In this document: piece after piece, positions 1 to 53,796 of the stretch
Numbering within the stretch: the stretch's first letter is position 1
Layout: every line of letters starts with the position of its first letter
Assembly (NCBI GenBank): GCA_001179505.1
Contig: CDMY01000275.1
Location: forward strand, 1 to 63,932
Reading direction: 5' to 3'
Origin: Vitrella brassicaformis CCMP3155
Taxonomy: Eukaryota > Protista > Chromerida
DNA: 63,932 bases
Notes under the pieces: model-generated
Told to the model about the DNA's origin: nothing
Databases searched by the model: none
Seen by the model: only the letters and a program-made list of their open reading frames with translations
Made by a program: the position numbers and the translations under genes

Positions 1-1060
1 ACGCCAGACTCTGCTGGTGGGTTTGCGGCCTTGGAGATCACATTGGCGCGGGCGGCCTCGTACGTCTGCTCAGCCGTGGGAGGCTCCTGGCCTGCGTCCT
101 CAGCGTCGGCAATGGCGTTCTCGACGGCGTTGTCCATCTTGCTGCGCACAACGAGCACAGGGACGCGACGACGAAGGCACTCCTAGTAGATCTGACACGA
201 GAAGACACACACGGAGACAGAGACACGGAGAGAGGGGTGACAGTCCAGAAAAGAGCCCTCCCGGTCATGTGCTGACCTTGTGGTCAATCGCGCGCAACCG
301 CTCGGCGACGACGAGCAGGACGATGGTGGCGTATCTGATCCCAATCATTCGGGGATATGTATCCTCGGGCACAAGCAACGTCCCTGCCCCTGGGCAGAAG
401 CGACAGAGAAAGGATACACAAACTTTCCTCTGTTTCTCTGTGCCCCCCGTCTCTCTGCTTCCTTTGCCCCGTCACTGCTCGCCCACCCGGTGTGTCGATC
501 ATGATAGCCAGGTGGAAGAGTGGGCTGTCCTCGGCGAAGGTGTAGACGGTGGGTCTCTCCGTGCACTCGCCAAGAGCACTAACCGCGGCCCGCGCGACAG
601 TGCTGCCTCCGCGGGCCAGCGCGTAGAGATGGCTGACCACCATCATCAGCAGGTTGATCAGGGTCGACTTGCCGGTGCCCGCGTTTCCACACAGCATGAC
701 CTGTGCCCTGTTCGGGTGATCCTCCATGGCCTGCTTCTGGTACTCGGTCCTCGGATAGTCCTGCTCGAACTTGCGCTTCCTCTCCTCTTCCTCGGCGAGG
801 GCCTTGCGGGCTCCCTCATCTTGCGCGGCAAACAATTGTTGCTCGTGACGGCGCTGCAGGTCTGCCTCGTTCTGCTGACGGTTGGCTTCTGCCTGCGTCT
901 CCATCTCTTCGGCCGCACCTTTGGCCGCCCGACGAACCGCTTCTGGAACTGGACCGCCTCCACCCCCGCCGAAGGGGAGTTTGGCGACTTCGACGGCTGC
1001 AAGAACGTAGGGCACAGCCTGGAAGACAGCGGAGGCCACGGTAGAGACCACGTTACCCAT
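1..1060 (-). CDS. IRG/IIGP (p47)-like P-loop GTPase; 3' end runs off the window
   Basis: Spliced by eye from exons 1060-487, 389-277 and ~191/182-1. N-terminus MGNVVS (N-myristoylation-type), coiled-coil, G1 GNAGTGKS, G3 DTPG followed by AGTLLVPEDTYPRMIGIRYATIVLLVVAERLRAIDHK, and G4-like VRSKMD. This spacing matches immunity-related GTPases. Confidence 0.7.
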
Positions 1061-2877: not shown

Positions 2878-4659
2878 TGCCGCCCGAAGCTGGTTGGGAA
2901 GGTGCTACCGCATTTGCCACAGCGGTCTTTTCTGATGGTGACGAAACTGAGGATATGAGGGTAGGAGAAGAACAGCTGTGCTCTTTTGCTTCAACGCACT
3001 AGACACATACCGGTGTCTGTCATGCGTAGTTGATGGACCTGGACCCACCAGACGTGAACGCATACGACACACTCATCGAGGCATATGGGCGATGCGAACG
3101 ACTCGATGAGGTGAGGAAGGACAGGCAGACACAGACAGTGGTGAATGGATGGATGGGTGGCTGAGTCGATGTGTGTGTAGGCATTGAGACTGTGGCGTAA
3201 AATGACGAATGGGCGCGAGGTGGAGCCCGTGGAGCCCAACAACTACACATTCAAACGCACGCTCGACGCCCTCGCGGATCGGTTCCACAAGTAGCCATTC
3301 ACGCACACACCCCACAGTAACCACAGTTATGCGTGTGCGACTTTCAGGTTGGTTCGTAGTGGTGTGACGCCCAACCCGGTGCAGTACATGATTCTGATCA
3401 AGGGCTTCGCACAGATCAAGCAGATCGACATGGCACTGTGGCTGTACCGAGATATGAAGCGAAAAGGCGTCCCTTGCAACGATGTGATTCGGCCAGCCAC
3501 ACAGCACAACACATACACACACACACACAAACGAACATACCTCTGTGTGCACGTCATCTGTGCGTACGTAGGTGACGTACAAGACGCTGATCGACGCGTG
3601 CAGGCTGGTGTCTGACATGCGTCAAGCGGTGGACATTCTGAAGGACATGAATGCCTCACTCCGGCACCCGCTGTACTGGTGGACCATCGACACGTACAGC
3701 GCCATGATCAAGGGCTTGTGCACACAGGGCAACATAGACGCCGCCCTGGAGCTGTTCGACTCCATGTGGGGCCGCGGTATACAGCCAGACACTATCATAT
3801 ACAACGCACTGCTGGAAGGTGCCCCTGCCCACACACACAGGGATAGAGAAAGAGACAGGGGAAAAGAGCAACGGTGTGTGTGGATGTGTTGTGTAGAGTG
3901 TGCTCGTCGGTACAATCTACACATGACGGAGCAGCTGCTGCAGAACATGATCCAATCCGGAGTGGCCCCCACCTCACACACACTCACCATACTGGTGGGT
4001 CAGGGTGTGTGTATGTGTCAAGGAGTGTCTGTCTGTCTGTCTGTTCCTCGCACAGGTGAAGCTGTACGGCCTGGCCAAGGAGTTTGACAAGGCCCACAGC
4101 GTGGTGACAGAGCTGTTCCGCCGGTTCAGCATCGATCTGAAATACCAGGACGCACACGTATGGACTGCCTTCATGGACGCGTGTATCGCCAACCAACGCC
4201 TACCACTCGCTATGGAAGTGTCTGAAAAGGTCAGACACCCCCACTCCTTCCCACGTCAACACACACAGATTGTTTTCCTTTCTCTCCATTGTGACACGCA
4301 GATGTTGGTCGCTGAGACAAAGCCCAACGCCAGCGCCTTCGGCGCCATCATAGTGGGGTGTGTCGAGGGCGCCTTCAGCTCCGTAACCGACCCCAACGCC
4401 AGCCACGTCGAGTACTCGGTGAATGCCATCGGTTTCGCACAACTCGCCCTCCATTACGAGCTAAAACTCGAGAAATTCGTGTGGCTGAAACTCAAGGCCA
4501 TGAGAGAGAGTCTTATGCCGCCAGATAAGCTTATCAGGCATCTCGACAAGCTTGTGGCCGATTCCAAGGACGGAAAGCACGTAAGCGATGACCACTCAAC
4601 CACCGCCAGCAAATGTCTTGTGACATGTGTCTTTGTGTCATGTCAATCAGACACCTTGA
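2878..4659 (+). CDS. Pentatricopeptide repeat (PPR) protein, multi-exon; start uncertain
   Basis: Tandem ~35-aa repeats across exons: PDVNAYDTLIEAYGRCERLDEALRLW, PNPVQYMILIKGFAQIKQIDMALWLYRDM, VTYKTLIDAC, TYSAMIKGLCTQGNIDAALELFDSM, PDTIIYNALLEG, PTSHTLTILVKLYG. Splice phases are consistent where checked. Confidence 0.9.
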
Positions 4660-14823: not shown

Positions 14824-15359
14824 TCACCGCGCGTAGGGGTTGAACTGCACACACACGTACACAGACAGACAGCCACAGATGCAGGCCAGGCCAAATGGGC
14901 GTGGCGTCAAGTGCACGTAGATCTATCAGATCTGCCCAACCACCATCTCCCTCCCTCCCTCCCTCCCCCTCCCTCACCCACCTGGAAAGGGAAGTGCTTG
15001 TCGTAGGAGAAGAGTCTGGCCTTGAGCCACAGCGCCATCATCGACTGCTTGACGTCTGTGGTGTGCGCCGGCCGGGGCATGAGCACGTTGAAGGCGTAGT
15101 CCACCCTGGCGCGTTGGCTGCCGGTGCTCTTGAGGTACTCGGGCAGCGCCTTGACCACATTGACGTCGTCCCACGAGAAAGCGTTGAAGGCCATCTTCAT
15201 GGCCTGCTCCTCCTGCCAGTCCGCCGCTGTCTCGTATGCCACTATCATCTTGAGGTCGCTGATAAGCCTCTCAACAGCGGCCGGCTTCTGTTTGGCAAGT
15301 TCAGCTGTCACGAAGGTCTGCTGGTCAGCCGTCAGCGGTGACGATGAGGCCCCTGACAT
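14824..15359 (-). CDS. Small unknown protein (2 exons), head-to-head with Dicer
   Basis: Exon MSGASSSPLTADQQ...WLKARLFSYDKHFPFQ, GT donor, then CAG acceptor at 14845-14847 giving FNPYAR* (TGA 14824-14826). Confidence 0.7.
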
Positions 15360-15672
15360 GGCGAAAGGGTGCAGATCTTCGTTTCCCATGCGCCGATCGC
15401 TTGCAGCTCGCAAGAGAATGAGATGGGCAAATCGCCGCGAATTTCGCTGCAGGAGAATCAGCTCGCTCGGTACTGTCAGTCACTGCTTGGAAACCGTCGT
15501 GTATTCCTACATGACATCAGCAGCCGTCAATTCCTGACTCAGAGCTGGACGCTGTGTGCAAGTGATCTCGGCTGTCCCTGGGGCTGTCCGCAGTGTATTG
15601 GAGGACAGCATCGCTTTGCATAGCCCCTGCTGTGTCGTTTGATTCATCAGCACAAGTGACAAGACCACAAGG

Positions 15673-16877
15673 ATGGACCGCGAGCAGAGCACCCATTCGC
15701 CATCGCGGATGAATGCTCCTCGAGACTACCAGCTGTGGCTCTTTGACAGAGTCAAGAGGGACAACAGCATCGTCTTCATGCCAACAAACACAGGTATGCA
15801 AGGCCGCACTCAACGCCCTCTGCGGTAATTCGTGTGTATATGTGTGTGTGTGTGTGTGGATGGATGGATGTGTGTGTCTGCAGGGAAGACCCGCATAGCC
15901 ACGCTGCTGATCGACCACGTTCTGAATCAGCCTGAGTGCGCGTCCAATATCATCGTTTTTTTGGCGCCAACGTACGTCAAGAAGCACTCTACTCCTGAGC
16001 CCACTCATACGCACTCCATTCATTCGACTGTCAGGAAACCGCTGGGCGCCCAGCAGGAGGCCGTGATTGAGCTCGAGACCCGGGCAGGGCCCGTCCTCAT
16101 TCACGGCGATGTCCGCCTTGTGGGACCTGACTCAGGTAGCTACGAAGACACGCACAAACAAGACGGCGAGAAAGTGCGGCGTACACAGACAGTGGTAGTG
16201 TGTGCGCACATTCAGACAACTGGGACGATCCTTTGACGTGGGATCGACTCTTTTACGACTTGGAGGGCAACGCGGCGACGCCATTCACGTCTGTCGGAGT
16301 AGATCAGGACACCCTCAAGTCGTTCAGGACGTCGTGGATGGACGACGCGCAGCAGACCGCCGCTGCTGAAGACGCGTCGGATGTCTACAGCAGCGTGTGC
16401 GGGCCGCCCCGCGTATTCGTGATGACGCCCGCCAAGATGGTGGAGCTGCTGCATCCCGGCATGATTCGCCTGGATAGGGTGGCGCTGATGGTGCTGGATG
16501 AGTGCCACCACGTCAAGGGAGGCGACATGTACTCGTCCATCATGAGAAACTTCTACGATAGGGTGCCGGTGAGCAAACAGGGGGAAACCAAGGCAGATCC
16601 CAACCGGGACGTAAATATGATGGCGCATGTGTGTGTGTGTGTGCGTGTGTGTGTGCAGGTGAAAGATCGGCCACACATCCTCGGTCTGACTGCGTACCCA
16701 TCGAAAGGGAAGGCCAATGCATATGAGGCGATGGCCCAGGATGAGATCCATGCTATCGAAAGAGTGCTGTGCGCGCGACTGATCGTCCCACCAGCAGCCC
16801 TCTTGGAACCCTTCTGCCCCGTAACCAAAGCAAATGAAGATACTGCGTCGCACCAGAGTCCATCGAGTCTCTCTCCC

Positions 16878-16908
<31 letters not shown>

Positions 16909-19900
16909 TTCTCTGTGTGTGTGTGTGTGTGTGTGTGTCTTCAGTCCGTCACGGAGGAGCAGCTCAGATACGACGTGCCGCCCCCAGACAGCCATGCCGA
17001 CTGGCAATCCGTCCTCGACAACCAGCTGTGGGCACCCCTCTTCGCCACGGAGATCCCGGCTGCATTCGACAGACAGGACAAGGAGGCCCTTGCTCACCTC
17101 AATCCATCCCTGACGGCCGACCAGTGGATCGAGAAGGCCAAGGAGCACGTCACTAAACGCCTGGAGGGGGTGAAGGGAAACGTGTCGGTGGTGTTGACCG
17201 ATGTGGGTATCCGTGGGGTGGTGAATGGGCTGACGGTGGTGGCGCAGAAGGGCGGCATCATGGTGGCCGACGACGAGGACCAGAGCAGCGACGCAAGTGG
17301 CCCTGCGCGTAAGAAACAGAAGCTGCCCCCGGACGCAGGTGCCGATACAGACTGTGCTTTTCCCGTTATATGTGTAGAAGAGCTCTTCTTCTCTGGTGTA
17401 TGCAGGTGCGCCACCTGACCTGCTGCAGGAGATCTATCAGCTGCCACTGCAGCTCCTCACCACAGCCCTTCAACCAAGACCAACAGGCGCCGCTCTGGTC
17501 GCCCCACCCGATGCACCCGGCCCCTCGCCCGTCCTGAGCGATCACATGATGGACCTCCTCCTGACTCCCAAGGTCAAGCTGCTCCGCGAGACCATCCTAG
17601 ATGCACTTGAGCCGTTCAGAGTGGCCGGTGCTGGCGACTTCCAACTCTATGGTGACTCTGCCGGCTCGACAACGGCAATCCGCCACTACTCAGCTGCAGT
17701 GCACCAGCTGAAGGTGCTCGTGTTTGTAGAGCGGCGGCTTGCTGCTGTGGCTCTAAAGGCTGTGCTACAGGAGACCCTCCGAGGGCCGGATGGGAGGGGT
17801 CTGACTGTAGAGGTGGTCATGGGGACCAACGCCAGTGCGGCGGGCAACCCTGGCAAAGTGGAGTTTGATGGTACGCACGGAAGGGCGATACAGGGAGTGT
17901 GGGAGCCCTTCTTCGTGCGCCTGCCTGTGATGTGCAGCCAAGGCCCAGGACGCCATAATGGGTCGGTTTCGGGACACCACAGCAGCAGGCATACAAGTGC
18001 TGGTACGTACGGACACACGACCACAGGCAGGCAAACGGAAGATGAATCAATCGCTCGTGTGCGGTGCGCATGCGTGTCTGTCTCATCCCCTGGCTGTCCA
18101 GATCTCCACCAGCGTGTTAGAGGAGGGCATCGACGTCCCTCTCTGCAACTGTGTCGTCCGCTTCTCTCCCGTCGTCACCGGCAAGGAGAACGTCCAGTGC
18201 CGCGGCCGGGCGAGAAAGGCCGGCTCGCGCTACATCCACCTCATCCCCAACTCGCAAGACGGCATCGCAATCCGGCACCGACTGGCGAGCTATCAGCGAT
18301 TTGAGACGCTGCTGAGAGAACAGGCCAAGGCCAACCAAGAGGCGGCCATGAGAGGCGAGGGCGGAGCGGTGGGGGCTGGGAGGGCGGTGGAGAGTCCGTA
18401 TGTGACTGTGGATGACGTGGAGAGGGAGGCCGGTGTGCGGCCGCTCTTTGTGCCGGCGACGGGCGCTTATGTGCCGCCGGACAGGGGATTCGTCAAGGAC
18501 AAACTCTACAAGTGAGTGGACAGCTGACGGCTGACCTACAGCCATGCATCTCTGATTCTGTCTTTGCTCATGATGTAGGCTGTATCATGCGTACAATCCG
18601 CTGTCTGGCAAGTACGAGAGCGTCTACGGCATCATGGTCCTGGAGAAGGAGAAGGAGACCCTCTCCTACGACCCCTCCACACACACCGCCACACTCACCC
18701 TGCCCGCATTCAAGTAAGAGTGCAGACCCCCATGCGCCTCAGTGGCACAGCAGCAACAAGGGGCCAATGACGGCGACACCATGATTGTCACGCACACGGG
18801 GTGGAGGAGAGCTGTCGGCCGCCTGGGCGGGGAGGAGAGCCCCAAGGAGCTGAAGGAGAGGGTCATCATCGGGGTGTACATGCAGGCCCTGCAGACCCTA
18901 CACCAGGTGAGAGCGGGGGGAGATTGATGCGGTCGGTCGGTCGGTCGGTTCGTGTGTGTGGATGGGGTGGGATGCGTGTGTACGTATTTGTGTCAGATGG
19001 GTATCATAGACGACCACCTGATGCGATACGGCAGCATCGCACGCCAGCACTGGGAGAAGAAACGCAGGAAGTATGGCCAAGCCATCACTCTGCCACGAAA
19101 GGTACGTCGTAGACACGAAGGTCATCGAAACCCCATCCCATCTGCCTTTCATCCTTTCCGCCTCTCTCTCAGCCTCCGCTTTGCACATCGTGGCCTGATG
19201 GCATCCTCCCGCACCACTTCGCCCCCTCCCCACCCCCAGCCCCCTCCTCGCTCCCCTCTCTGCTGCTGCACACGCTGTCATTCTCGCCACCAGGCAGCCT
19301 GCTGCACTTCCCTGACTACGGCGGCCTCATGGGTCGCTACAGAATGGCGGATGGGGTGAAGCACAGGAGAATTGTCACGCCGGTGGGGATTGTGATGGCG
19401 GCTGGGCTCGTCGGGGGCGAGAGCATGGTGCTGGACGGGCTGTTCTACCCGATGAACAACGAGGCGTTTGGCGTGGAGGTGAGGCGAGAGGCCGAGGTCA
19501 GCGTCACGATAGAGTAAGCGCGGAAGCTGCAGGTGGGTGGGTGGGATGGTGGGCATGGATGTGTGCATCCGGATCGGTGCGTGGGTGTCATTGCAGGTGT
19601 GGACCAACAAGAGCTGCCGCCTTCTCGATGTCAAGAACTTCATCCATTGGGGGGGCCAGGGCCAGCAGCACCCGACCAACATCAACTCACTAATGGATGT
19701 CGACGCCTCAACCGACCGTGACCCCCATCTTCCCCCTTTCGCCTTTGCGGCCCCTCTCGACTCATCTGGCAAGGCCATCGACTGGCGATTCGTCGACGCA
19801 GCGCTGGAATACATCAACATGTAGGGAAAGAAGCTGCCGTGCGGGTGCTTTTTCTCTACACACACTGCGCCACGTGTGTTGTCATTCAGGTACGAGAGCC

Positions 19901-22296
19901 AGACGAGGCGTCAGGGGCGGATGGCCGTACCCAGCATGGTGGCGGTGAGGGCGGCGTCCCACGGGCCGGCAGCCGCCATGCTGGAGGCTCTGGGCTCACG
20001 CAATGGCGAGGAGCAGATGGCCCTGTCGCCTTCCAAGCGGACCAAAGCCCGGCGCTACAGATGGCACACGTGGGCGAGGAGGGAGGGAAGGAGAACGTCA
20101 GGAGGGATACATACCCATTTGTGTGTTGCTGCGTTGGGTGTGTTGGTGTCTGTCTGTCAGTGTGAGGGGCATTGTTGAGAACGAGAACGCATCCACTTTT
20201 GCTGTGGAGGATGGCCAGACGCTGCAGCAGTACTGCGCTCAATCATGGTAAGCCGGACGGACACACAGCCAGAGAGTGCCCGCGCTACACGGCTGCGCTG
20301 CAGTTGCGTGTTGTGTTTGTGCCTGTGAGCAGCAAGCACATGACTGAGCGCTTCGATGCACCGTTCCTCGTAGAGGCAGACCAATTCAGAGGGGTGGGTG
20401 TGGAGAGAAGAGACGCTCGCTCACTCATATCTGGTAATACTTGTGTTGTGTGGTTGCTGACAGGGCACTCGCAGTTTGTTGTATGAGGAGGAGAAGCTGC
20501 GCCCGACATCACAGCTGCGGAAGGACCGCTACCACCCACCAGAGCTGCTCAAACTCCTGCCACTTACCGCACCCATGGTATACACACCGAGAGAGAGAGG
20601 AAGATGGCGAGACGACTCTCCACCCATTGCTGCCTCTAATGTCTGCAGGCCGAATCGCTGACGTGGCTGCCCTCCCTCCTGTACCTGATAGAAGTGCAGC
20701 AGGCCATACAGGAGTTCCGCCACACCCTGCTCTCACGCCTCAACGACCGACTCAGCTCAGTCGACCAGACCCAGGCAGCGATCCATCTCGACTATGGCCG
20801 CCTCGTCGAGGCGTTGACGTGCCCCCTGCTCAACTCGCAGATTGGGGCGACCAAGGACGTCTTGGTCGACTGGCGGGCTCCCGCTGATCTGCGCCCGAGT
20901 GGGTGTCGGTCAGACTACCAACGACTAGAGGTGCGTGCAGCCGGCTGGCTGGCCTTCTGCTTGTGTTTGTGGTGGTGGTCACGTTGAGATGGCGTCTGTG
21001 TTGTCTTGAGTTGTGTTGAGTGCAGTGGTTGGGGGATGCCGTGCTGAAGTTCCTTGCCAACCTTGGCGCCTACCACGCGTGCGAGGGCCGCGGGGAGGGG
21101 CCCATGACGTCACTGTCCAGCCAGATGAAGGCCAACGAATACCTCCGCAAGTACGTGAGAGCACGGGAATCTTCGTGCTTGCGTGTGCGTGCATCTTTCC
21201 TGCATCCAGGATGTGCAAGGAGCACCGCTTCTACGAGTACACGTGGGCCCAGCCGTTCAGCCGCAGGCGGACAGTCGAGTCTACCCGAGCACAGACCATC
21301 GGCGACAAGACACTCGCCGACATTGTCGAATCCATCATGGGGGCCATCTACCTCTCCAACATACACCACGATGACACCAAGATAGAGGTGCGCACACCCC
21401 CACCCCCCCTCCACACACACAGAGAGAGAGCAGGTGTCGTATGGCTGCATGACTTGCAGGTCGATGATGTCGCTAACGATGCCCCTGACTACCAGCGGGG
21501 CGTAACAGCTGTAGCCGCCTTTGTCGACACCTTCCTCCACATGGACGACATGCCCTGCCTGCTGCCGCTGCTCTATGCGCCGACGGCCAACGATACGGCG
21601 ATGGCCAACGGTGCTGGGGAAGCGCGTGATTTGGGGCCGATCGAGGCCATGTGGGGGCGGCAGTTCCACGACCAAGGCCTGCTGAGGAAGGCGCTCACGA
21701 GCCGCTCGTGCGTTGGTGCGGGTGTGTCGAGTGCCGCCCAGACGAACGAGGAGCTAGAGTTCGTCGGCGATGCCGTGCTGGAGGTCCTCGTGTGCCATCA
21801 GATCTTCTTCGACGACACGCCGGCCGCCCCGTCGGCCGCCGGCGAGCTGATATCCGTCGACCCCCTAGATACGGAAGAAGGTACACCACCCATACAGGCA
21901 CACACATGACGACCATGGCAAGACGCCCTCTCTCATCGTGCCTGCCATGGTGAATGGGCGTCTGTAGGTCGCCTCACCGATCGAAAGAAGAGCTTGCTCT
22001 CCAACAGACACCTCTGCGAGCGGCTTCTGGCGCGCCTCCGTGACGCACCGTCCGGCCGTCTGTGCATCAGCGACGTGCTGAGGGTGGGCAATGCGGCGCA
22101 GCGTGATCATCTGAGGCAGCTGCAGATGGACTGGGAGGCGAGGAGGGAGGATTGGTCAGCGGGGCGTGAGGAGAGTGGCGTGAAGCATGTGGGGGACCTC
22201 TATGAGGCGCTGGTGGGCGCCACGTATGTCGATAGTGGCGGGGACCTGCTGGCCGTCTGGCGGGTGATAAGTCCCGACACTTGTGTGTGTAGATAG
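15673..22296 (+). CDS. DCL: Dicer-like protein: DExD/H helicase, dimerisation-like region, degenerate PAZ-like region, RNase IIIa + IIIb
   Basis: RDYQ, PTNTGKT, IIVFLAPT, VLDECHH, ILGLTA, VLVFVERR, STSVLEEGIDVPLCNCVVRF, VQCRGRAR. PAZ-like TLQQY...FLVE...PPELL. RNase IIIa YQRLEWLGDAVLKF...LADIVESIMGA; RNase IIIb NEELEFVGDAVLE...VGDLYEALVGATYVDSG. Confidence 0.95.
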
Positions 22297-22469
22297 CCTA
22301 GCCCGTGGTCGGTGCGGGACAGGCGGGCAGTCTTGTAAGTAAACGATTTTCCATGAGTAATATGTATGTAATATGAGGGAGCTCATGATAGAGTGTATGC
22401 GCTTGGCCACTGTGCATGTATCTGTCTTATGTGTCTTGGGTAGGTCATGTGCCCTGCCCGTTTTTGTCA

Positions 22470-22818
22470 CAGCAGGGCAGGCACGTTTTGACGCCGTTTT
22501 GCAGTAATGATATATGCTGCGTGACCAGTGGCCCTCGGTAGACAGGGATTTTTTCTTTCAGTTGCTATGCAGAGGCGGGTGGGTCGTCCTCCGGATGAGT
22601 GCTTTTCTAGTCAGCAGTTGACCCATGCAGGAGGGCACACAGGCACACACCTGTACACTGTCAGAGACACACAGAAAGATAAATCGCTGCGGGCAGAGAG
22701 ATAAAAGCCGGAGGGCTGGGGTGGGTATTGCGGGGTCGCTACTGCACTTCACTCACTGACCCTCTCTCCATACCATACCATACCTGTGTAAGAGACGCTG
22801 CACGTGTGGCTGCCTCCG
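22470..22818. repeat. ~350-bp dispersed repeat, copy B (reverse complement of 5201-5549)
   Basis: See copy A; starts ~174 bp after the Dicer stop codon. Confidence 0.92.
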
Positions 22819-23335
22819 TCACGTTGTGTGTGCCAAGCCAATCTAAGTTGCGTGCGCATACTTATGCACGTACCCCTGGCCGCGTGCGGCATGTGTGTGT
22901 GCATGTACGTGCTTGTCACAGACGACAAGCATTCAGTGAGTAAATCCGACCAGTCAGTCAATCGGTAGCCATACCATAACATGACATGTCACCATGTCAC
23001 CACACCCACCCACCATGTACGTTGATGGTGCCGAGAGAGAACTCACCACGGTAGCGACACACTCTGTCGTCGCATCGTGGCCGGCCAACGACATATACAT
23101 ACCCGCTCATATGAGGCCCCCTCCCCTCTCCCGTCACGTGTGCAGACAGACAGACGGCCAGACAGACAGACAGACAGACCGAAGCATGACGCACCTGTCT
23201 CCAAGTGCACTACTTGCCTCGCTGCAGGCAGAGAGAGTAGAGTGCACACACAGCACACGAAAAAGACGAAAAAGGCGGACACCTGAGTTCTTACAGAAAA
23301 CCATGCATCTCCTACGTCTATCTCTCTGTGTCTAT

Positions 23336-24486
23336 CTATCGGCTGGGAACGTATGGGCAGTCGAATTGGAGGGCATAGTCGGAGCCGGGGAACACACAGA
23401 AATAGACGTACCCGGTGGCGTCGGGGTTCTCGCACACGCGGCACTCGTCATACACGCACCGCCCGCACGACAAGCAAACCTCCTCGTTGGGATACTGCTC
23501 ATCAACAGCCTCATCCGAGTCGTCGGGCGGCTCTGAAAGGATACACACACTCAACTCAGACACACACAGACAGAGCCACATGCTGCCTGTCTGTCTGTCT
23601 GTCTGGCCGTCTGTCTATCATCCGTGCGTGCAATCGATGAGGCCGACCTTCACAAGTGATCATCGTTCCCTGGGTGTCGTTTTTCTTGGCGCCGAGGGTG
23701 GACATGGCGGCGATGTCGAAAGGCATGACACACTCGGCGTTCCGGTAAGCCATCCACACCGACTGCATGCATCATTCATTCAACGATGAAAGAGTGGTCC
23801 CTCCCTCCCTTGCTGCTGGCTCACTCACCACATCGGCCGTCTTATTGTCGACCGCGGCAACCACGGCATGTGCGGCTCCGCCCGTTGACGCAGGCACCCT
23901 GACGACGCCGGACGAGTCGCTCGAACGCGAAACGAGCCTGCATGTCATGTGCGTTGCAAGGGGACATCCAGATGCTTGACAAGGTCTTTTCGCGCCTTAA
24001 TTATCCCCCTCCCCACCTACCCGTGCTCTCCTCTATACAGCACGGCCAAGTGCGCATTGTCCGATTTGGAGCTGACAGCCAACATCACCTCGTCAAAACC
24101 CGCAGCTCGCACGTCACCCTGCATGGACACACACACAGAGCGCATCGGTCAGACAGCCTCACCCACCCACAGCCACACCCACCGTACTGTACCAGATTGA
24201 CGTTGATGTACTGTTCGCTCTGCGCCGGGACAGGTCGGGTGGGCAGCGAGGCGAAATGGACCAGCCTGTCCTTCGGAGGCGGCTTATCCATCAACATAGG
24301 CGCCGTGAACACCGGGCACAGCTGTCGCCCTTTCGAGGACTTTTTGTCAGTGTCATGGCGCGTCTGCGCAAGCAGCTTCTGCACGTCTTCCAGCACTTCC
24401 TCGAGCCTTGTGGTTACCGCCTCGCAATGTGTCGGACTGCCGAAAGCAGCGAGGAGAAAGAGGGGAAACAGGAAGGCCTTCATCAT
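23336..24486 (-). CDS. Putative secreted protein with Cys-rich C-terminus
   Basis: N-terminal hydrophobic signal MMKAFLFPLFLLAAFGSPTHCEA; GT/AG-bounded exons; last exon ...EEVCLSCGRCVYDECRVCENPDATGYVYFCVFPGSDYALQFDCPYVPSR*. Confidence 0.6.
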
Positions 24487-25060
24487 CTCGGCCGTTAGAA
24501 AACCCGCAGTTTACATACCTCATTGTAAATTGCCTGTGTTGAGCATGGATGGTTGACAGTACACACGCAAGGAGAGAGAGAGCATCGTGCATGTCTGCAC
24601 AGATGGATGGATGATCACACACATGCAAGCCATGTTTGAAGTGAAGTGATCATGGTGGCAGGCAGGCAGGAGGGAGGTAGTGGGATGGACAGCACCCACA
24701 CTTCCTTCCGTCCCCCGCCTTCCTGGCTCTCGCTGCCGTCCGTGTCTGCGTGGCTGGCTGCATGTGCGCTAGCCGTCTTCCTCCATCCCCCTCCCTACCT
24801 CCCTCCCCTCCCTCTCTCCCTCCCTCTCTCTCTCAATCTCTCAATCTCTCCCTCTCTCTGTCTAACGAATTGCTGCCCTTGCCTTGGCTGCTGGCTATTG
24901 GCAATGAATGACACACACGTGTGTCATGGAGCTACAACAATCAGACAGACTGAGTATGTACAACCATACAAACAGACGGCATCACCCAGCATCCCATCAA
25001 CCACCCAACCGCCCCCCCCTTCCCCGTCTGTCTGTCTGTCTATCGCATCCGCTCGCTAGT

Positions 25061-28000
25061 CTACAAGTAAAAATTGGTGCAATTGAGGTGCTTGTGGGGC
25101 TTGTCCCACTTCAACGCGCCACTGATGTACTGCAACAACCTAACACACACACACACACACACGCGCGCACGCACGAGTCCATCGTGTAATGCACTCAGTG
25201 TGTTGGCTCTTAGCATGCCCACTTCTCTGCCATCTTGACGGGAGCCGGCACCTTGATGCCCTCATCCCGCTCTGACACACACAGACATCCACATAAACAC
25301 ATGGACACACACGTGGTGTGTGTGGCGATTCGTTCTTGCTACTGCACTGACTGTGGAAGTTCTGATAGCTCATCGTCAGCAGGTGCGTGTAGATGTACAG
25401 GTTGGGCACTGACACGCCTGCAGCACACACACAGCTGCAGACAGACATGGTGGGCGTCGCCCTCCCTCTTTTGGCCCTTTCCCCGCCCACACACCGGTGT
25501 TGTTGTACAGCACGTGGTAGAGCGTTGGTGTGGGGCACGAGCCAGGGGGGGCTCGGCCGTGGTAGAAGTAGAAGTCCCACACGTCCCTCGACGTCACACC
25601 CGAATCCACCACAGTACCTGCACACACAGACAGGCAGACACACAGACAAACGGATCCATCCACACACTCATGCAGTCATCCCTCCCGCGCACCCACCTGG
25701 CTGGACGCTGCCGTCGCCTCTTCGATAGGCGTCGTGCGACCGCTTCCCGCCGTTCCCCCCATACCCGCCCCCATTCCCACCATTGCCGCGCCCATACCCG
25801 CCCCCATAGCGGCCGCCGCGGTCGGTGGGTCGCGCCGGCGACGCGTGCGACGAGGGGTAGGTGGACGGCAGGGAGGGGGTCGTCTGGGTGCTCGTGGCGG
25901 GCGGCACGTCGCCGCCGCGGGGACGCACATCACGGGGCTCCGACACATGAGTGGTGAATCTGACAGAGAAGGAGAGATTATTCACGTGTCGTACGCCGAT
26001 GGTTCGTTCTTTCGTCTGCACGTACCGCATCGTGACGTGTTTGTTGACAAAGATGAACGCGACGGTGGGGCGAGGGAACTCGTTGAGGTCCTTGGTGTGG
26101 GGCGTGAGCTTGGCGGTCGTGAGGGCCGCCTCCTCGTCCTTGCCCTGACTGATGAGGCCGGCGAACTTGTTCTTGCGCGCAGTGAGGGCCTCGTTGGCCT
26201 TGGCGAGGGCCTCGTTGATGCCCTCAAACACGCCGGGCAGCTCGAAACGCACACACGTAACTTTCTGACCCTCAGACACCCCTACACATAAAACACACAC
26301 AACACATACACACACAATGAGCGGCTGGCTGGATGGCTGCCTTGCTCAGTGGCCCACCGCTGCGATAAATGAGGATCTGGTCGGGGAGCTCCGAGTGAGT
26401 GATGAAATACTTCTTGCATGCGGCTGAAGAACCACAAGAGCATCAAGGGGCGTGTGTGTGTGGCATGTGGCGATCTGCTCTGCCCTGCTCACCGGTGAAG
26501 GACTCCTTGACTTTTGTCCAGTCGACGGCCGTGGCCTGAGCGCTCTCGAAGAAGTCCACCTGCATACGTAACACACCACACACAGCAAAGGGTGAAAGGA
26601 CCAGGCCAGCGAATGTGTCAATGTGTGTGTGGCTGAGAGATGAGCGGATGGGTACCCGTGACAGGTATCTCGTGTATTTCTCGTTGAAGGACGCCGTGAA
26701 GACCATGCAGATCTGCCACTTGCCGTGTACTGCACCACACCACACACACACACACACACCCCATTCCCTCTCCCCCGTGTGTACTTGTGCGACTGTCTGA
26801 GTGTGTACCTTTGCGCCTGATGGTGTCGATGCCGCAGACCATGGTCTTCTTGCGGCCCTCCACACCGTCTGGGCCGAAATCGGGGTGCCGATCAGCCACC
26901 TTGACGTGATACGAGTAGCCACTCATCTATATGTGCACAGACACAGACAGACAGACGTATGAGTGACACATTTGGTACATCCATCTCTGTGTGTGTGGGT
27001 GTGTGGGTGGGTGGCTGACCTTGTTGCGGATTTTGTCGATGACCTTCGCCTCGGCCACTCCCCATTTCTTCTGCACCGTACTCGCCTTCAAGCACTGATG
27101 ATCATACTCCACACAAACACATGGATGTGTGCGCGTCTGTCTGGTGTCCTGTGTGTCGTCCCATCCCCTCTATCTACCTGGCTGGCACACACTATGGAGT
27201 CTTGTGTCGAGTGGAGGCTGAAGGCCTGCTTGATCTTGGCCCGGTCCTCCCCCACTGCATCCTTCGAGCGACCGCCACTACAGACACACACACACACACA
27301 CATACATGGCCGCATTAATGTGGTGTGATGGCGTGTTCGGTTCGGTGGGGGGGGGGGGCGTACCTGTCGTCGAGTATCCACACGATGCACGTGATGCCGC
27401 CGTTGAACTCGCGCACACGCTCAGCCGCCTGCCGCAGGTCGGTGTCCGTCACGCCTCGCTCGTGACTCGCCAAATCCACCGTGTAAACTGGGTTGAACCT
27501 GACACACACACAGACACACAGGTGTATGTGAGCATGTCGATAGCAGGCACACGTGTGTGTCGAGGGAGGGAGGGGCGTGTGGTACTCACGGACGGCCCGT
27601 CTGATCGGTGTGTTCGTCGAGCAGACCAAAGCCTGCAATCAACCAAACAAACAAACAAACATACACCCATACTCAGACACCAAGCTCGCAGGAACATCAT
27701 GCTCCTCTGGTGAGGGGGTCCCTCTCTGCTTACGTTTGCCCTTGGTCATGAGGGAGTCGACCAGTCGGCGTCGGAGGTCCGTGTGGCGGCCCTTGCACAC
27801 GAACAGCGCCCTGTTGAACTTCACTGTTTGCTGCTCGTCATCCTGGATACACACACACACACACACACATACACATATGTTGAATGAATGACACTCCTGC
27901 GGCGCTGCGGTGACCTCCAGGTTCTCGGTGGAATAGCCGCTGAACAGGCTGCTCGATATTTGGGAGGCTTCTACTTCTACGGCACTCGGCATCTGAACAA

Positions 28001-30514
28001 CAGATACACACACACACACACACACATATCTGTCTGAGTGTGTTCTATGCGTGTCTGTATGTCTGTCTGTGTATGGTACCATCTGCAGATGGAACTGTCT
28101 GAGGATCTTCTTCTCGCGCTCCACCTTGTCCAGCGCGCCCAGTAGGTCCTCATACATGCGGAAACGCCGATCTGCAAACAAGATACACCTGAAGGCTCTG
28201 TGTGCGTGTGTGTGTGTGTGTCGGTTTATGTGTGGTACCTGGGGGAAGTCGGCAGTAGTTGTGGACGAGCTGCATCTTCTGCCGGTTGCTCTTGGTCTCA
28301 TCATCCAGCCCTGCACACACACGGGTCATACGCACATAAGCAGACCAACACACTTCCCCCGACGGCCGTCTGTGTTGGTGTGTCGCACGTTTCTGACCTG
28401 TCAGGTAGCACAGCGTGGTGGGGATGAATATCTCCTTGCCGTTGCGAATGCTCTTGACAAATGGCTGTCTGCTCGGGGACAGGTACTTGTCCGCCGACAC
28501 GCCACGGAGACGGCTGTAGTGCTGCACACACAGGTACACGAACAGACATGCGAAGAGGGCTATGTGTGTTCTTTTGTGTGTTGCGCGACAGCTGACCTGG
28601 CTAAAGTAGTCAAAGAACGTGACGAAGTCGTTCGTGCGGTTGTTCATGAAGCCATCTTTCTTCAGATCTTTCTCAACCAACTGCAAATCACCCGTCACAC
28701 ACGCACACACACACACACAGACACACACACACACACACACAGAGGTGGGAGAAACATATGGATGCACGCGGCCTCCTTCTCGCTTCTCACTCCGTCGATG
28801 CGATACCACTGGTCCGCATGGTCTGACATCACCCACAGAGAGAGAGAGAGAGAAGCGACACATACATGAAAGCAGCGTGTCGTGTGTATGCGGCGTGTTC
28901 GGCTGTGTGTCTTACATGTGACCACGCCACGCCCCTCATACAACTCGCCGAGCACGGCCAGGTTGGCGGCCTTCGACGAGCTACCTGCACACACATGGAC
29001 GGCAACGGACAAGAAACCGTGTGTGGCCTCTCTCTCTCTCTCCCTGTGTGTGTGTGTGTGTGTGTGTATGTGTGCGTGTGGGATGTGAGCTGACGCATTG
29101 CAGCCTGCAGTATCTCGTAGACCGGGGCCTCCTTGATGCAGATGTGCTTCACATCAAGCTGAACACCAACACACACCAACACACACACACGTGTCTGTGG
29201 TGCCCTCCCTCCCTCCCTCCCTGTTTCCCTCACTCCCCCGCCCGCCACCCCACCTGCAGCACGGGTCCTCTCATGGTGGCGATGGTGGTGAGGATCATGC
29301 CTCGGCACACGCGGATGGAGTGCTGGTCCGGGGTGCTGCGCTCCGGCTTGAGAGTGCACACGGGGGCTGCAAAGTCGAAGTACACCCCTCTCACACCGCA
29401 ACGCTGAACCAGACCATCACCACCACGCCATCACAACCACAGATACATGCCATGCAGCGCATACGTGTTATGGTGTCGTGTTCACCTTTGACTTGCGCGC
29501 CAGGGCCTTGAACAGGTTGTCGAGGTACATACGGCCCTCCTGGCTCCTCATCACACCGAAATCAGCTGCACAGCACACCCACAAAGAGAGAGAAGAGAGG
29601 GACCAAAGACGCACACGTTCGTCGAGGTGTGTTTGTGTGGTGCGTGTGGTTTGGTGGGTTACGTACGGCAGAAAGACTTACCAACGTCGAGTTTCTTGAC
29701 GCGCGTGAATGTGAACTCGTACTCGACGTCCATCTCATCGCTACGCATCGCGGGCTTCTGCAGGACACACCGAGAGAGGGAGGGAGGTGAATGCGTCATG
29801 TGTGCGTGTTTCCCTCCTTTCATCCCTCGTGTACGTACGAGTTTGAGTGTGGCGGTAACCTCGAGCTGCTGGCCGGGAATGGCGGCTGCGATGAGCTGGC
29901 GGCCGGTGGGCACGATGTACTGGCTCTTCAACGCCTGCTCCACCTGAGAAAGCCATCCATCCATCCATCCATTACAGAGAGAGAGAGAGAGAACCATTAC
30001 AGAGAGAGAGCGGTGACACACACACACACACACACGCGCGTAAAATAACAGAGAGGAGGGATGGTGCATCCATCACCTTCTTGGCGCTGCGAGCGACGGC
30101 CGTCCGCATCTGGAAGGAAACCTCCTGAATGAGAACAAATAGTACGCACTTGCGCTCCTGACCTTCGCCAGACACAAGCCACTTACTTTCTCGTTGTACG
30201 CGTCGAGATCCTCGGCCTTGACGTCGTACAACACCCACTCCGCTCCATGGCACTGCTGGAGCTCGAAACAGTTGCTTTTGAGCCTCACCTGCACACACTC
30301 AGACAGGAGGAGCACAGATTCCAAAGAAACGGCCTCTCTGCAGATGAATCTCTCGTGCCTTAGCGAAGTTCTGGCGGTTTGACACATGTGCAGGCTGCTG
30401 CGGTGCACCAGGTGCACTTGCAGGGAAGCCTGCGACGCTCTCTGGCGGTGGAGGGACGGCGCCGGCGGGGTCAGCAGCAGCAACCGCGCTCGAGGACGGC
30501 TGCTGGAAACTCAT
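25061..30514 (-). CDS. Argonaute/PIWI-family protein (PIWI-like C-terminus), many exons
   Basis: N-domain VRLKSNCF...LYDV. PAZ-like VTFFDYF...YLSP.RQPF...IFIPTTLCYLTG. MID IKQAF/HQCL/KIRNKMSG. PIWI MVCGID, ASFNEKYTRYLSR, ILIYRSGVSEGQ, FIFVNKH, PGTVVDSGVT, DFYF, PTLYHVLY, IKVPAPVKMAEK; C-terminus ...HLNCTNFYL* (TAG 25061-25063). Confidence 0.95.
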
Positions 30515-30987: not shown

Positions 30988-31287
30988 NNNNNNNNNNNNN
31001 NNNNNNNNNNNNNNNNNNNNNNNNNNNNNNNNNNNNNNNNNNNNNNNNNNNNNNNNNNNNNNNNNNNNNNNNNNNNNNNNNNNNNNNNNNNNNNNNNNNN
31101 NNNNNNNNNNNNNNNNNNNNNNNNNNNNNNNNNNNNNNNNNNNNNNNNNNNNNNNNNNNNNNNNNNNNNNNNNNNNNNNNNNNNNNNNNNNNNNNNNNNN
31201 NNNNNNNNNNNNNNNNNNNNNNNNNNNNNNNNNNNNNNNNNNNNNNNNNNNNNNNNNNNNNNNNNNNNNNNNNNNNNNNNNNNNNNN
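30988..31287. other. Assembly gap (300 N)
   Basis: N run. Further 300-N gaps at 48032-48331, 52090-52389 and 60934-61233; the identical size indicates placeholder lengths. Confidence 1.
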
Positions 31288-52933: not shown

Positions 52934-53796
52934 GCCCTTTTCTGTTCTGCCTGGCCTTCCAGCCTGCCCTCCGCAAGCTACAAGAGCAGTTCCCCGACGC
53001 GCTCGTCGCTGGCTTCATGGATGACGGCCTGGGGGGCATGGACGAGTGGGTGGTGGCCCCCTTTCTGACGGCGGCCGCAGCGGAGTTTCTGGCGGTGGGC
53101 TTGGCGCTGCGCTTGGACAAATGTCGAGCGTGGTCCCCTCACTGGCGCACACCTGCCGACCTCCCCACAGCCATCACTCGCCGCGGCGTCCGCGCGTCCA
53201 CCGACGGCATCATCATCCTCTCTGCCCCGATTGGCACGCCTGCCTTCGAGGACCGCACTCTGCAGGCCATTGTGGCCGGCCATCAGCGTCTGCTCGACGC
53301 GCTCGTCGCCTGCAGGCGTGCAAATCGGGGCAGAGAGGATGATGATGCCGTCGGTGGACGCGCGGACGCCGCGGCGAGTGATGGCTATGGGGAGGTCGGC
53401 AGGTGTGCGCCAGTGAGGGGACCACGCTCGACATTTGTCCAAGCGCAGCGCCAAGCCCACCGCCAGAAACTCCGCCGCGGCCGCCGTCAGAAAGGGGGCC
53501 ACCACCCACTCGTCCATGCCCCCCAGGCCGTCATCCATGAAGCCAGCGACGAGCGCGTCGGGGAACTGCTCTTGTAGCTTCCGGAGGGCAGGCTGGAAGG
53601 CCAGGCAGAACAGAAAAGGGCCCGCCGCATCGCCTTGCTGCACGCCCTGCTGGCTGCTCTCTTTGAGAGTCTTGAAAGCTTGCAGGAGTAGATGCCTGCC
53701 GAACCCCTCTCTCGTACTGTTTTGCCGGCGCTCCCTGCAGATCTCCCCCCTTGAGAGGTGAAATCGGACGAGCAGAACCCACCGGCCTTCATCCAC
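52934..53796. mobile_element. Non-LTR retrotransposon reverse-transcriptase fragments arranged as an inverted fold-back
   Basis: GVQQGDAAGPFLFCLAFQPALRKLQEQFPDALVAGFMDDG...GLALRLDKC...IILSAPIGTPAF is encoded on both strands. Arms 52934-53243 and 53312-53621. Confidence 0.88.

What the first reader, a model, noticed from the sequence alone, without database searches (positions are those of the whole stretch)
15673..30514. Physically clustered Dicer and PIWI-type Argonaute: a compact RNA-silencing locus
Seen: a full Dicer-like gene and an Argonaute gene converge within ~2.8 kb, separated by one small gene and a repeat. Known: eukaryotic RNAi genes are normally dispersed, and the pathway is lost or reduced in many apicomplexans. 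Inference: a co-inherited or co-regulated Dicer/PIWI module, possibly a Dicer-dependent PIWI-clade pathway as in ciliates. A retroelement hairpin and an Smr nuclease in the same window may be a substrate and a helper.
Basis: partly seen in the sequence, partly recalled or inferred. Interest (0 to 1): 0.8.

Follow-up and report, generated by a model that had tools for sequence, protein, structure and literature searches.

The report
Dicer and slicer-dead PIWI genes adjacent
In the alga Vitrella brassicaformis, a relative of malaria parasites, a real Dicer-like gene and a real PIWI-type Argonaute gene lie tail-to-tail 2.8 kb apart, but both belong to large scattered gene families, so I found nothing showing that the closeness matters.

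Summary
A Dicer-like gene lies on the + strand at 15,673-22,296. It has a DECH helicase, Helicase_C and two RNase III domains with their acidic residues present. A 984-aa Argonaute gene of about 27 exons lies on the - strand at 25,061-30,514. It is already deposited as a 'Piwi domain-containing protein' of Vitrella brassicaformis CCMP3155. The two stop codons are 2,764 bp apart, with no assembly gap between them.

The Argonaute matches solved PIWI-clade proteins at 84-88 bits, against about 24 bits for human AGO2. Two of its cutting-site residues are clearly changed (YRDG to YRSG; His to Glu), and the glutamate-finger position aligns to Thr/Ala. It is probably slicer-dead.

The 'module' reading is not supported:
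- The genes converge.
- An unrelated single-copy gene on the - strand, predicted by eye to be secreted, lies between them.
- Dicer's start codon faces an ATP-synthase subunit gene about 280 bp away.
- The genome has at least 2 more Dicer-like loci, at least 10 more PIWI-like loci and several RdRP loci. All are on other contigs and none is paired.

Random placement gives such a pair with p about 0.003, but this is a post-hoc figure. Linkage in other species could not be tested, because no orthologue was reachable. This scan had already noted other PIWI-type Argonautes and Dicers elsewhere in this genome.

The parts
15673..22296 (+). Dicer-like gene (coding range; multi-exon). DECH-box helicase, Helicase_C, an unassigned middle region, then RNase IIIa and RNase IIIb.
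   Evidence: Pfam exon by exon. The best PDB relatives are Dicers and DCLs. ATG and stop positions. Motifs read.
16140..18512 (+). Helicase core of the Dicer-like gene. Contains the DEAD-family motif 'VLDECHH' and the Helicase_C motif 'QCRGRARK'.
   Evidence: DEAD E=1.7e-4 and Helicase_C E=3.7e-6. PDB best hits are DCL3 and DCL1, and Dcr-1 and human Dicer ahead of the RIG-I-like helicases.
20960..22296 (+). Tandem RNase IIIa and IIIb domains. Acidic pairs read as present: '..RLE/..WLGDAV', 'ADIVES', 'ELEFVGDAV' and 'GDLYEAL'.
   Evidence: Ribonuclease_3 hits. PDB best hit is Arabidopsis DCL1. Motifs read.
23339..24486 (-). Small intervening gene of about 5 exons, built by eye. It has an N-terminal signal-peptide-like start (MMKAFLFPLFLLAAFG) and a Cys-rich C-terminus. 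It is single-copy and matches no known family.
   Evidence: Frames. No meaningful Pfam hit. No paralogue in the genome. No Atlas relative. The exon joins are inferred, not shown.
24788..24863 (.). CT-rich simple tandem repeat between the small gene and the PIWI stop codon.
   Evidence: TRF.
25061..30514 (-). PIWI-type Argonaute gene of about 27 exons, 984 aa (= P0001).
28234..28991 (-). PAZ-domain exons (P0001 aa about 277-389).
   Evidence: Pfam PAZ E=1.5e-8 at aa 277-379. Exon map. Aligns to the MILI PAZ region.
25064..27100 (-). PIWI-domain exons (aa about 568-984). Residues at the tetrad positions: D632 (GID); T672 aligned to the glutamate finger; S in 'YRSG' in place of the second Asp; E in 'VPAPVKMAEK' in place of His. 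A G/Y/R-rich loop is inserted at about 25,695-25,990.
   Evidence: Pfam Piwi 2.7e-26. Residue-by-residue alignment to MILI 7yfy. TRF repeat at 25753-25808.
14910..15391 (-). ATPTG10-like gene (ATP-synthase-associated). It lies head-to-head with Dicer, about 280 bp between the start codons.
   Evidence: Pfam PF20716 E=9e-44. Met positions.
30988..31287 (.). 300-N scaffold gap, 474 bp upstream of the PIWI start codon. It is the nearest gap and lies outside the Dicer-PIWI interval.

Best explanation
Two ordinary, intron-rich nuclear genes of Vitrella brassicaformis lie tail-to-tail.

Gene 1 is a Dicer-like enzyme with a Dicer-type helicase and two apparently intact RNase III domains. No PAZ or dsRBD was detectable, the same apparent layout as Toxoplasma Tg-Dicer. 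It is inferred to cut long double-stranded RNA into small duplexes. The several RdRP genes in the genome are a plausible source of that RNA.

Gene 2 is a full-length PIWI-clade Argonaute (N, PAZ, MID and PIWI domains). Two of its four cutting-site residues are clearly replaced (Asp to Ser, His to Glu), and the glutamate-finger position aligns to Thr/Ala. It is inferred to bind small RNAs and to silence without slicing, by recruiting partners. The same substitutions occur in several paralogues, so this is an old family trait and not decay.

Each gene is one member of a multi-copy family scattered over the genome. Their adjacency is most likely a coincidence of gene order with no mechanistic role. 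They have separate promoters, and an unrelated gene lies between them.
For: Shown:
- Domain content of both genes.
- PIWI-clade scores far above AGO-clade scores.
- Argonaute fold of the deposited model: pTM 0.77, TM 0.70-0.72 to Aubergine and Piwi-like 1.
- Substitutions at the tetrad positions.
- The same YR[S/T/C]G and VPAPxKYAE variants at loci on C537, C227, C413, C425 and C319.
- Other Dicer-like loci: one on C376 with helicase plus two RNase III domains, and one on C473 with two RNase III domains.
- PIWI/PAZ hits on 7 other contigs, plus PIWI C-terminal exons on C255 and C113.
- RdRP hits on C246 (two places), C91, C338 and C379.
- No Argonaute hit within 10 kb of the other Dicer loci, and no Dicer hit beside the C255 and C113 loci.
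- Convergent layout with a gene on the - strand in between.
- Dicer is head-to-head with an ATPTG10-like gene.

Inferred: the dicing activity, the loss of slicing, small-RNA loading and the lack of co-regulation.
Against: - With about 3 Dicer-like and about 12 PIWI-like genes in 72.7 Mb, one pair within 3 kb is expected by chance only about 0.3% of the time. Coincidence is therefore not a comfortable explanation, although the test is post hoc.
Co-expression is not excluded.
- Linkage in Chromera or other alveolates was not testable.
- The glutamate-finger position lies on a loop with acidic residues nearby (E667, D675). Only two of the four tetrad changes are firm.
Confidence: 0.62

Rival explanations
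1. The pair is a functional unit. This Dicer makes the small RNAs that this PIWI protein carries, and selection keeps the two genes linked or in one chromatin domain so that they are inherited or expressed together.
For: - The adjacency is unlikely under random placement (p about 0.003).
- Both genes belong to the same pathway.
- PIWI-clade Argonautes outside animals are loaded with Dicer products in ciliates (established knowledge).
Against: - The genes converge and an unrelated gene lies between them.
- Dicer shares its upstream region with an ATP-synthase subunit gene.
- No other Dicer-like or PIWI-like locus in the genome is paired.
- No orthologous locus was found in which to test conservation.
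Confidence: 0.15
2. The PIWI gene is a decaying or non-functional copy, and its degenerate catalytic site reflects relaxed constraint.
For: - The tetrad reads D-(T/A)-S-E.
- The sequence is very divergent. The exhaustive phmmer search with one 95-residue exon and three word-index searches with the whole protein or parts of it found no relative other than itself.
Against: - All of about 27 exons are intact and collinear with a 984-aa product.
- The predicted model has a confident Argonaute fold.
- The same substitutions are shared by several paralogues, which argues for an old, retained state.
Confidence: 0.08
3. The adjacency is an assembly artefact: a chimeric join between 22.3 and 25 kb.
For: - The assembly is a scaffold with four 300-N gaps in this window.
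- Simple repeats lie in the interval.
Against: - There is no N between 15.6 and 30.9 kb.
- The 6-kb stretch 22,000-27,999 is held at 0.89-0.99 of its sampled 31-mers by runs of at least three studies. This shows that the sequence is present in those runs, not that it is contiguous.
- Base composition is even across the interval.
Confidence: 0.03

Closest known systems
[quoted passage not shown] 2010, PMC2877743)
   Same: - It is in the same wider lineage (apicomplexans plus chromerids).
- Its Dicer has a helicase and two RNase III domains but no recognisable PAZ or dsRBD.
- Its Argonaute has PAZ and PIWI domains but lacks the slicer residues.
- Its Argonaute carries Gly/Arg-rich repeats that recruit PRMT1 and Tudor-SN.
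   Different: - Toxoplasma has one Dicer and one Argonaute. Vitrella has at least 3 Dicer-like and at least 11 PIWI-like loci.
- The Gly-rich stretch here is a loop inside the PIWI domain, not an N-terminal tail.
- Tg-AGO has been placed near plant and algal AGO-like proteins (PMC9935688), whereas this protein scores as PIWI-clade.
- Orthology was not tested.
- I know of no report of gene linkage in Toxoplasma, and none appeared in the passages read.
Ciliate Dicer-like and PIWI pathways (Tetrahymena Dcl1/Twi1, Paramecium Dcl/Ptiwi), from established knowledge
   Same: - They are alveolates.
- Their Argonautes are PIWI-clade and are loaded with Dicer products.
- Their PIWI families are large.
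   Different: - Ciliate Twi1 keeps slicer residues, which it needs to remove the passenger strand. Here they are replaced.
- No ciliate sequence was compared here.
- Chromerids are not known to eliminate DNA.
Animal PIWI proteins with solved structures (mouse MILI 7yfy, Drosophila Piwi 6kr6, sponge Piwi-A 7kx7, silkworm Siwi 5guh)
   Same: - They are the best sequence matches over the PAZ, PIWI-N and PIWI-C regions (47-88 bits).
- The PIWI-type motif 'RVPAPxKYA' is shared.
- They are the best structural neighbours.
   Different: - Animal piRNAs are made without Dicer.
- MILI and Siwi keep the DEDH tetrad.
- Identity is low, and this protein has an insertion of about 85 residues in a PIWI-domain loop.
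Prokaryotic Argonaute operons (pAgo with a nuclease, helicase, SIR2 or TIR partner), from established knowledge
   Same: This is the known case in which an Argonaute gene is physically linked to its functional partner.
   Different: - Those are co-transcribed operons in bacteria and archaea.
- Here two eukaryotic genes with many introns converge, with another gene between them.

Membership tests
Dicer / Dicer-like (class of RNase III with two catalytic domains) | Two tandem RNase III domains in one protein, with the catalytic acidic residues present | tested here: met
   Ribonuclease_3 hits on three consecutive + strand frames between 21,010 and 22,293. The motifs WLGDAV / ADIVES and ELEFVGDAV / GDLYEAL were read directly.
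Dicer / Dicer-like (class of RNase III with two catalytic domains) | N-terminal Dicer/RIG-I-type DExD/H helicase | tested here: met
   DEAD and Helicase_C hits. The DECH box was read. Top PDB hits are DCL3, DCL1, Dcr-1 and human Dicer.
Dicer / Dicer-like (class of RNase III with two catalytic domains) | PAZ/platform, DUF283 (Dicer dimerisation) and C-terminal dsRBD | tested here: inconclusive
   None was detected in exon-level scans of 18.5-21 kb. The genome-wide PF03368 scan found nothing in the window. Short exons weaken these scans, and several protist Dicers lack these domains (PMC2877743).
Dicer / Dicer-like (class of RNase III with two catalytic domains) | The helicase and RNase III parts lie on one transcript | not testable with these tools
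Support is indirect: same strand, correct order, and the C376 paralogue has the same order.
Argonaute/PIWI family | PAZ domain plus Piwi domain in one protein with the Argonaute fold | tested here: met
   Piwi 93 bits and PAZ 35 bits, both above Pfam's cut-offs. The Atlas model has TM 0.70-0.72 to PIWI and AGO clusters over 740-800 residues.
PIWI clade (as opposed to AGO clade) | Groups with PIWI proteins rather than AGO proteins | tested here: inconclusive
   No tree could be built, because no homologues were retrievable. As a proxy, PIWI-clade chains score 84-88 bits with three matched stretches, while human AGO2 scores 24.5 bits. The top structural neighbours are Aubergine and Piwi-like 1. 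This points strongly to PIWI but is not a phylogeny.
Slicer-competent Argonaute | DEDH (or DEDD) catalytic tetrad | tested here: not met
   Alignment to MILI: D573 = D632 (kept); E611 = T672; D643 = Ser in 'YRSG'; His in 'KYAHK' = Glu in 'KMAEK'.
Functionally linked gene pair / gene cluster | Physical adjacency | tested here: met
   The stop codons are 2,764 bp apart, with no N between them.
Functionally linked gene pair / gene cluster | Shared promoter or same-strand co-transcription | tested here: not met
   The genes converge. A gene on the - strand at 23,339-24,486 lies between them. Dicer's upstream region faces an ATPTG10-like gene.
Functionally linked gene pair / gene cluster | The linkage recurs among paralogues in the same genome | tested here: not met
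   RNase III/Dicer-like loci lie on C376, C473, C341 and C688. PIWI-like loci lie on C537, C227, C413, C425, C309, C531, C319, C255 and C113. There are no cross-hits within 10 kb.
Functionally linked gene pair / gene cluster | The linkage is conserved in other species | not testable with these tools
   No orthologue of P0001 was returned. Metagenome scans were blank. No eukaryotic relative genome is on hand.

The most novel reading that the evidence does not exclude
Vitrella runs a ciliate-like small-RNA system. Its Argonautes are an expanded family of PIWI-clade proteins loaded by Dicer products, and most of them are slicer-dead. Some carry Gly/Arg/Tyr-rich loops inside the PIWI domain as docking sites for methyl-arginine readers. 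Within this system, the Dicer-PIWI pair in this window is a dedicated producer-effector couple kept in linkage.
Probability: 0.1. Interest if true: 0.6.

Novelty: new member of a known kind. Interest (0 to 1): 0.3.

Why it matters
Chromerids are the free-living photosynthetic cousins of apicomplexan parasites, most of which have lost RNA silencing or reduced it to a single Dicer and a single Argonaute. This window shows that Vitrella keeps a helicase-type Dicer and a PIWI-clade Argonaute. The genome-wide counts show a rich, dispersed toolkit of several Dicers, a dozen PIWI-like genes and several RdRPs.

That is useful background for working out what the apicomplexan ancestor had. It also bears on whether PIWI-clade proteins loaded by Dicer are an old alveolate trait.

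The adjacency itself would matter only if it were conserved or co-regulated. It would then be a rare eukaryotic example of a linked producer-effector pair. Nothing found here shows that.

Tried and rejected
- **Six-frame Pfam scans.** Scans of the whole genome for Piwi and PAZ, and of the long - strand open frames, gave no hit in the window. For a while this suggested there was no Argonaute. It was a sensitivity failure caused by short, divergent exons, and overturned it.
- **Homologue searches.** All three homologous-protein searches with P0001 (whole protein, residues 55-795, residues 872-984) returned only the protein itself. The exhaustive phmmer search with exon 25995-26279 also found only itself. 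So no phylogeny and no Chromera locus could be obtained.
- **Encoding contig.** The look-up of encoding contigs has no record for P0001.
- **Metagenome scans.** Both scans, with P0001 and with the RNase III exon, were blank.
- **Reads.** There is therefore no read-level evidence on splicing, expression or contiguity. Those 40 positions were not sent to any search tool afterwards.
- **Literature.** Searches for Vitrella or Chromera together with Dicer, Argonaute or Piwi found nothing relevant. One broad search was badly framed and useless.
- **Clade of two paralogues.** PDB searches with exons of two paralogues did not settle this. The C537 exon scores about equally against PIWI and AGO proteins, and the C227 exon leans towards PIWI.
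- **Joined Dicer model.** Dicer was searched exon by exon by reference only, so its PAZ, DUF283 and dsRBD content stays open.
- **Complex prediction.** It was not used, because the report does not claim that the two proteins bind.
Full report
**What the window is.** The genome behind the window has 72.7 Mb in 1,064 contigs. The protein recovered from the window is deposited as an unnamed or 'Piwi domain-containing' protein of Vitrella brassicaformis CCMP3155. G+C content is even at 0.55-0.61 across 14-30 kb. The window has four 300-N gaps, at 30,988, 48,032, 52,090 and 60,934. None lies between the two genes in question.

**The Dicer-like gene.**
- Consecutive open frames on the + strand give these Pfam hits: DEAD (16140-17153), Helicase_C (17931-18512), and Ribonuclease_3 in 21020-21382, 21010-21906 and 21910-22293.
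- The sequence shows a DECH box ('VLDECHH') and the motif 'QCRGRARK'. Both RNase III signatures are present, as are the downstream acidic pairs: WLGDAV/ADIVES and ELEFVGDAV/GDLYEAL.
- Against solved structures, the helicase frames hit Dicers first (DCL3, DCL1, fly Dcr-1, human Dicer), and RIG-I-like helicases only after them. The RNase III frame hits Arabidopsis DCL1 first.
The last frame ends in TAG at 22,294-22,296. I saw no protein-like frame further downstream.
- No PAZ, DUF283 or dsRBD was detected in exon-level scans. That is inconclusive, because the exons are short. It matches what is reported for Toxoplasma Tg-Dicer (PMC2877743).
- Whether the helicase and RNase III parts are joined in one mRNA is inferred from strand and order, and from a paralogue on contig C376 with the same order. 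I searched Dicer exon by exon by reference and left out the step of searching a joined model.

**The Argonaute gene.**
- My first scans argued against it. Six-frame Pfam searches of the whole genome for Piwi and PAZ found hits on other contigs but none in the window. The long - strand frames gave nothing either.
- Reading all - strand frames showed Argonaute motifs on short exons: MVCGIDT, LIYRSG/VSEGQ, PTVAFIFVNKH, GTVVDSG...PTLYHVLYN and VPAPVKMAEK. Single exons gave only weak Piwi (E=0.005) and PAZ (E=0.03) hits.
- An exhaustive phmmer search with the exon at 25995-26279 found exactly one protein, P0001, of 984 aa.
- P0001 scores Piwi 2.7e-26 (93 bits) and PAZ 1.5e-8 (35 bits), both above Pfam's cut-offs. 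It maps back to about 27 collinear exons from 30,514 to 25,064 on the - strand. The stop codon is at 25,061-25,063.
- The ESM Atlas holds this exact sequence with a confident model (pTM 0.77). Its nearest folds are Aubergine and Piwi-like 1 clusters (TM 0.70-0.72 over 740-800 residues), followed by AGO clusters.

**PIWI or AGO clade.**
- Against all PDB sequences, P0001 scores 88.5 bits against mouse MILI and 83.5-87.4 bits against further Piwi-like 2 chains and chains named Piwi, Piwi-A or Piwi-like 1, each with three matched stretches (PAZ, PIWI-N, PIWI-C).
- It scores 65.9 bits against Drosophila Piwi and 47.3 bits against Siwi.
- Human AGO2 scores 24.5 bits, and KpAGO and QDE-2 score lower still.
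- This supports 'PIWI-type' strongly, but it is not a phylogeny. I could not build a tree, because all three word-index searches returned only the protein itself.

**Catalytic site.** The residue-level alignment to MILI gives the following.

| MILI residue | Role | P0001 |
|---|---|---|
| D573 | first Asp | D632 (kept) |
| E611 | glutamate finger | T672, flanked by Ala |
| D643 | Asp in 'YRDG' | Ser ('YRSG') |
| His in 'KYAHK' | fourth position | Glu ('KMAEK') |

- E611 is identified as the glutamate finger by its spacing: 38 residues after the first Asp and 32 before the second.
- The second position lies on a loop with acidic residues nearby, so it is less certain.
- The protein is most likely unable to slice. 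This is inferred, not shown.
- The same variants occur in other PIWI-like loci of the genome. 'YRSGVGEGQ' and 'VPAPFKYAE' are on C537. 'YRTGLGEGQ' is on C227, C413 and C425. 'YRCGLSDSQ' and 'VPAPVKYAE' are on C227. 'VPAPVKYAE' is also on C319.
- The degenerate site is therefore a retained family trait and not recent decay.

**What lies between and around the genes.**
- The stop codons are 2,764 bp apart.
- The small gene in the interval is on the - strand, the same strand as PIWI. I read about five exons from 24,486 to 23,339. It has a hydrophobic signal-peptide-like start and a Cys-rich end.
- That gene has no Pfam family, no paralogue and no Atlas relative. Its exon joins are my inference.
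- The repeats are simple: (CAGA)n at 23,143-23,179 and a CT-rich array at 24,788-24,863.
- Upstream of Dicer, an ATPTG10-like gene (Pfam E=9e-44) lies head-to-head with it. Its likely ATG is at about 15,391, roughly 280 bp from the Dicer ATG.
- A 300-N gap lies 474 bp upstream of the PIWI start codon.

**Is the pair a module?**
- Paralogue counts argue that these are ordinary members of dispersed families.
- RNase III hits lie on C473, C376, C341 and C688. The C376 locus has helicase exons plus two RNase III domains. The C473 locus has two RNase III domains and no helicase hit.
- Piwi or PAZ hits lie on C537, C227 (two places), C413, C425, C309, C531 and C319. PIWI-like C-terminal exons lie on C255 and C113.
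- RdRP hits lie on C246 (two places), C91, C338 and C379.
- Within 10 kb of the other Dicer-like loci there is no Argonaute hit. Beside the C255 and C113 loci there is no Dicer hit.
- Earlier notes of this scan, which I did not verify unless stated, also list a helicase-less Dicer, a full-length helicase-type Dicer, other PIWI-type Argonautes (one with a DEDD tetrad, one slicer-dead beside NRDE2), HEN1 and a GTSF1-like gene elsewhere in this genome. The scan has therefore met these gene kinds before, on other DNA of this genome.
- The convergent layout, with a gene in between, rules out a shared promoter.
- On the other side, a simple random-placement estimate (3 Dicers, 12 PIWIs, within 3 kb either side, 72.7 Mb) gives p about 0.003. 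The adjacency is not what chance readily gives. The estimate is post hoc, though, and many functionally related gene pairs could have been noticed.
- Conservation in other species, the decisive test, was out of reach. No orthologue was returned, the metagenome scans were blank and no relative genome is available.

**Contiguity and expression.**
- The 6-kb stretch 22,000-27,999 is held at 0.89-0.99 of its sampled words by runs of at least three studies. Two runs guessed to be RNA hold 0.44-0.51 of the words.
- Contiguity therefore rests on the absence of N and on the even composition. Expression is not shown here.

**The side claims.**
- The fold-back at 52,934-53,621 is real, with 344-nt arms that are 94% complementary.
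- Its arm is a dispersed repeat, with 99-100% copies on C278 and 73-78% copies on several other contigs.
- It lies about 22 kb from the PIWI gene and 545 bp from an N gap. It is a possible Dicer substrate only in the general sense that any hairpin transcript is.
- No Smr domain was found by the six-frame scan.

**Comparison with what is known.**
- The nearest described system is Toxoplasma's. Its Dicer has a helicase and two RNase III domains but lacks PAZ and dsRBD. Its Argonaute is slicer-deficient and carries RGG repeats that recruit PRMT1 and Tudor-SN (PMC2877743). A later perspective places Tg-AGO nearer the plant and algal AGO-like proteins (PMC9935688).
- The Vitrella protein differs in three ways. 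It scores as PIWI-clade, it belongs to a large family, and its Gly/Tyr/Arg-rich stretch is a loop inside the PIWI domain.
- Ciliate Dcl/PIWI pathways are the closest functional analogy (established knowledge). Prokaryotic pAgo operons are the known example of an Argonaute linked to its partner.
- I found no paper on chromerid RNA silencing in the library.

**Verdict.** The 'compact silencing locus' reading is not supported and was largely untestable. The genes are new, automatically annotated members of known families. Interest is modest.

Noticed in passing
window 25,695-25,990 (- strand); L001 1333-1500 (- strand): An insertion of about 85 residues lies in a PIWI-domain loop, between 'VNKHVTMR' and 'GTVVDSG'. 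It is S/T/P-rich and then G/Y/R/N-rich (RGGRYGGGYGRGNGG...), and it is encoded by the 12/21-nt tandem repeat at 25,753-25,808. The paralogue on C537 has an in-frame (GGR)n run at the same place. It may be a methyl-arginine/Tudor docking loop, but whether it is exonic was not checked against transcripts.
   Followed up: partly
L001, L002, L003, L004, L007, L008 (contigs C537, C227, C413, C425, C319): Several other PIWI-like loci of the genome share the degenerate slicer residues: YR[S/T/C]G in place of YRDG, and VPAPxKYAE in place of ..YAH. This looks like a lineage-wide expansion of probably slicer-dead PIWI-like proteins.
   Followed up: partly
window 52,934-53,621: A perfect-centre fold-back with 344-nt arms that are 94% complementary. 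The arm is a dispersed repeat, with 99-100% copies on C278 and 73-78% copies on C816, C707, C418 and C656. It lies 545 bp from an N gap, so an assembly artefact is possible.
   Followed up: partly
window 14,910-15,391 (- strand): An ATPTG10-like gene (apicomplexan-type ATP-synthase-associated subunit; Pfam PF20716, E=9e-44) lies head-to-head with the Dicer-like gene, about 280 bp between the start codons.
   Followed up: partly
window 23,339-24,486 (- strand): A single-copy orphan gene with a signal-peptide-like N-terminus and a Cys-rich C-terminal exon. It has no family in Pfam and no relative in the Atlas.
   Followed up: yes
L028 (C113:41,500-51,499) at 48-104 and 4390-4527 (+); L027 (C255) at 21-146 (-): PIWI-like C-terminal exons, 43-89% identical to the end of P0001. 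Two of them lie 4.3 kb apart on C113. They may be tandem PIWI paralogues or gene fragments that the Pfam six-frame scan misses.
   Followed up: no
window 16,868-16,938, 28,696-28,741, 29,045-29,080 and many introns: The introns of both genes are rich in (TG)n/(CA)n and (TC)n microsatellites, which read as 'CVCVCV' or 'HTHTHT' in translation. This is a handy marker of intron sequence in this genome.
   Followed up: no
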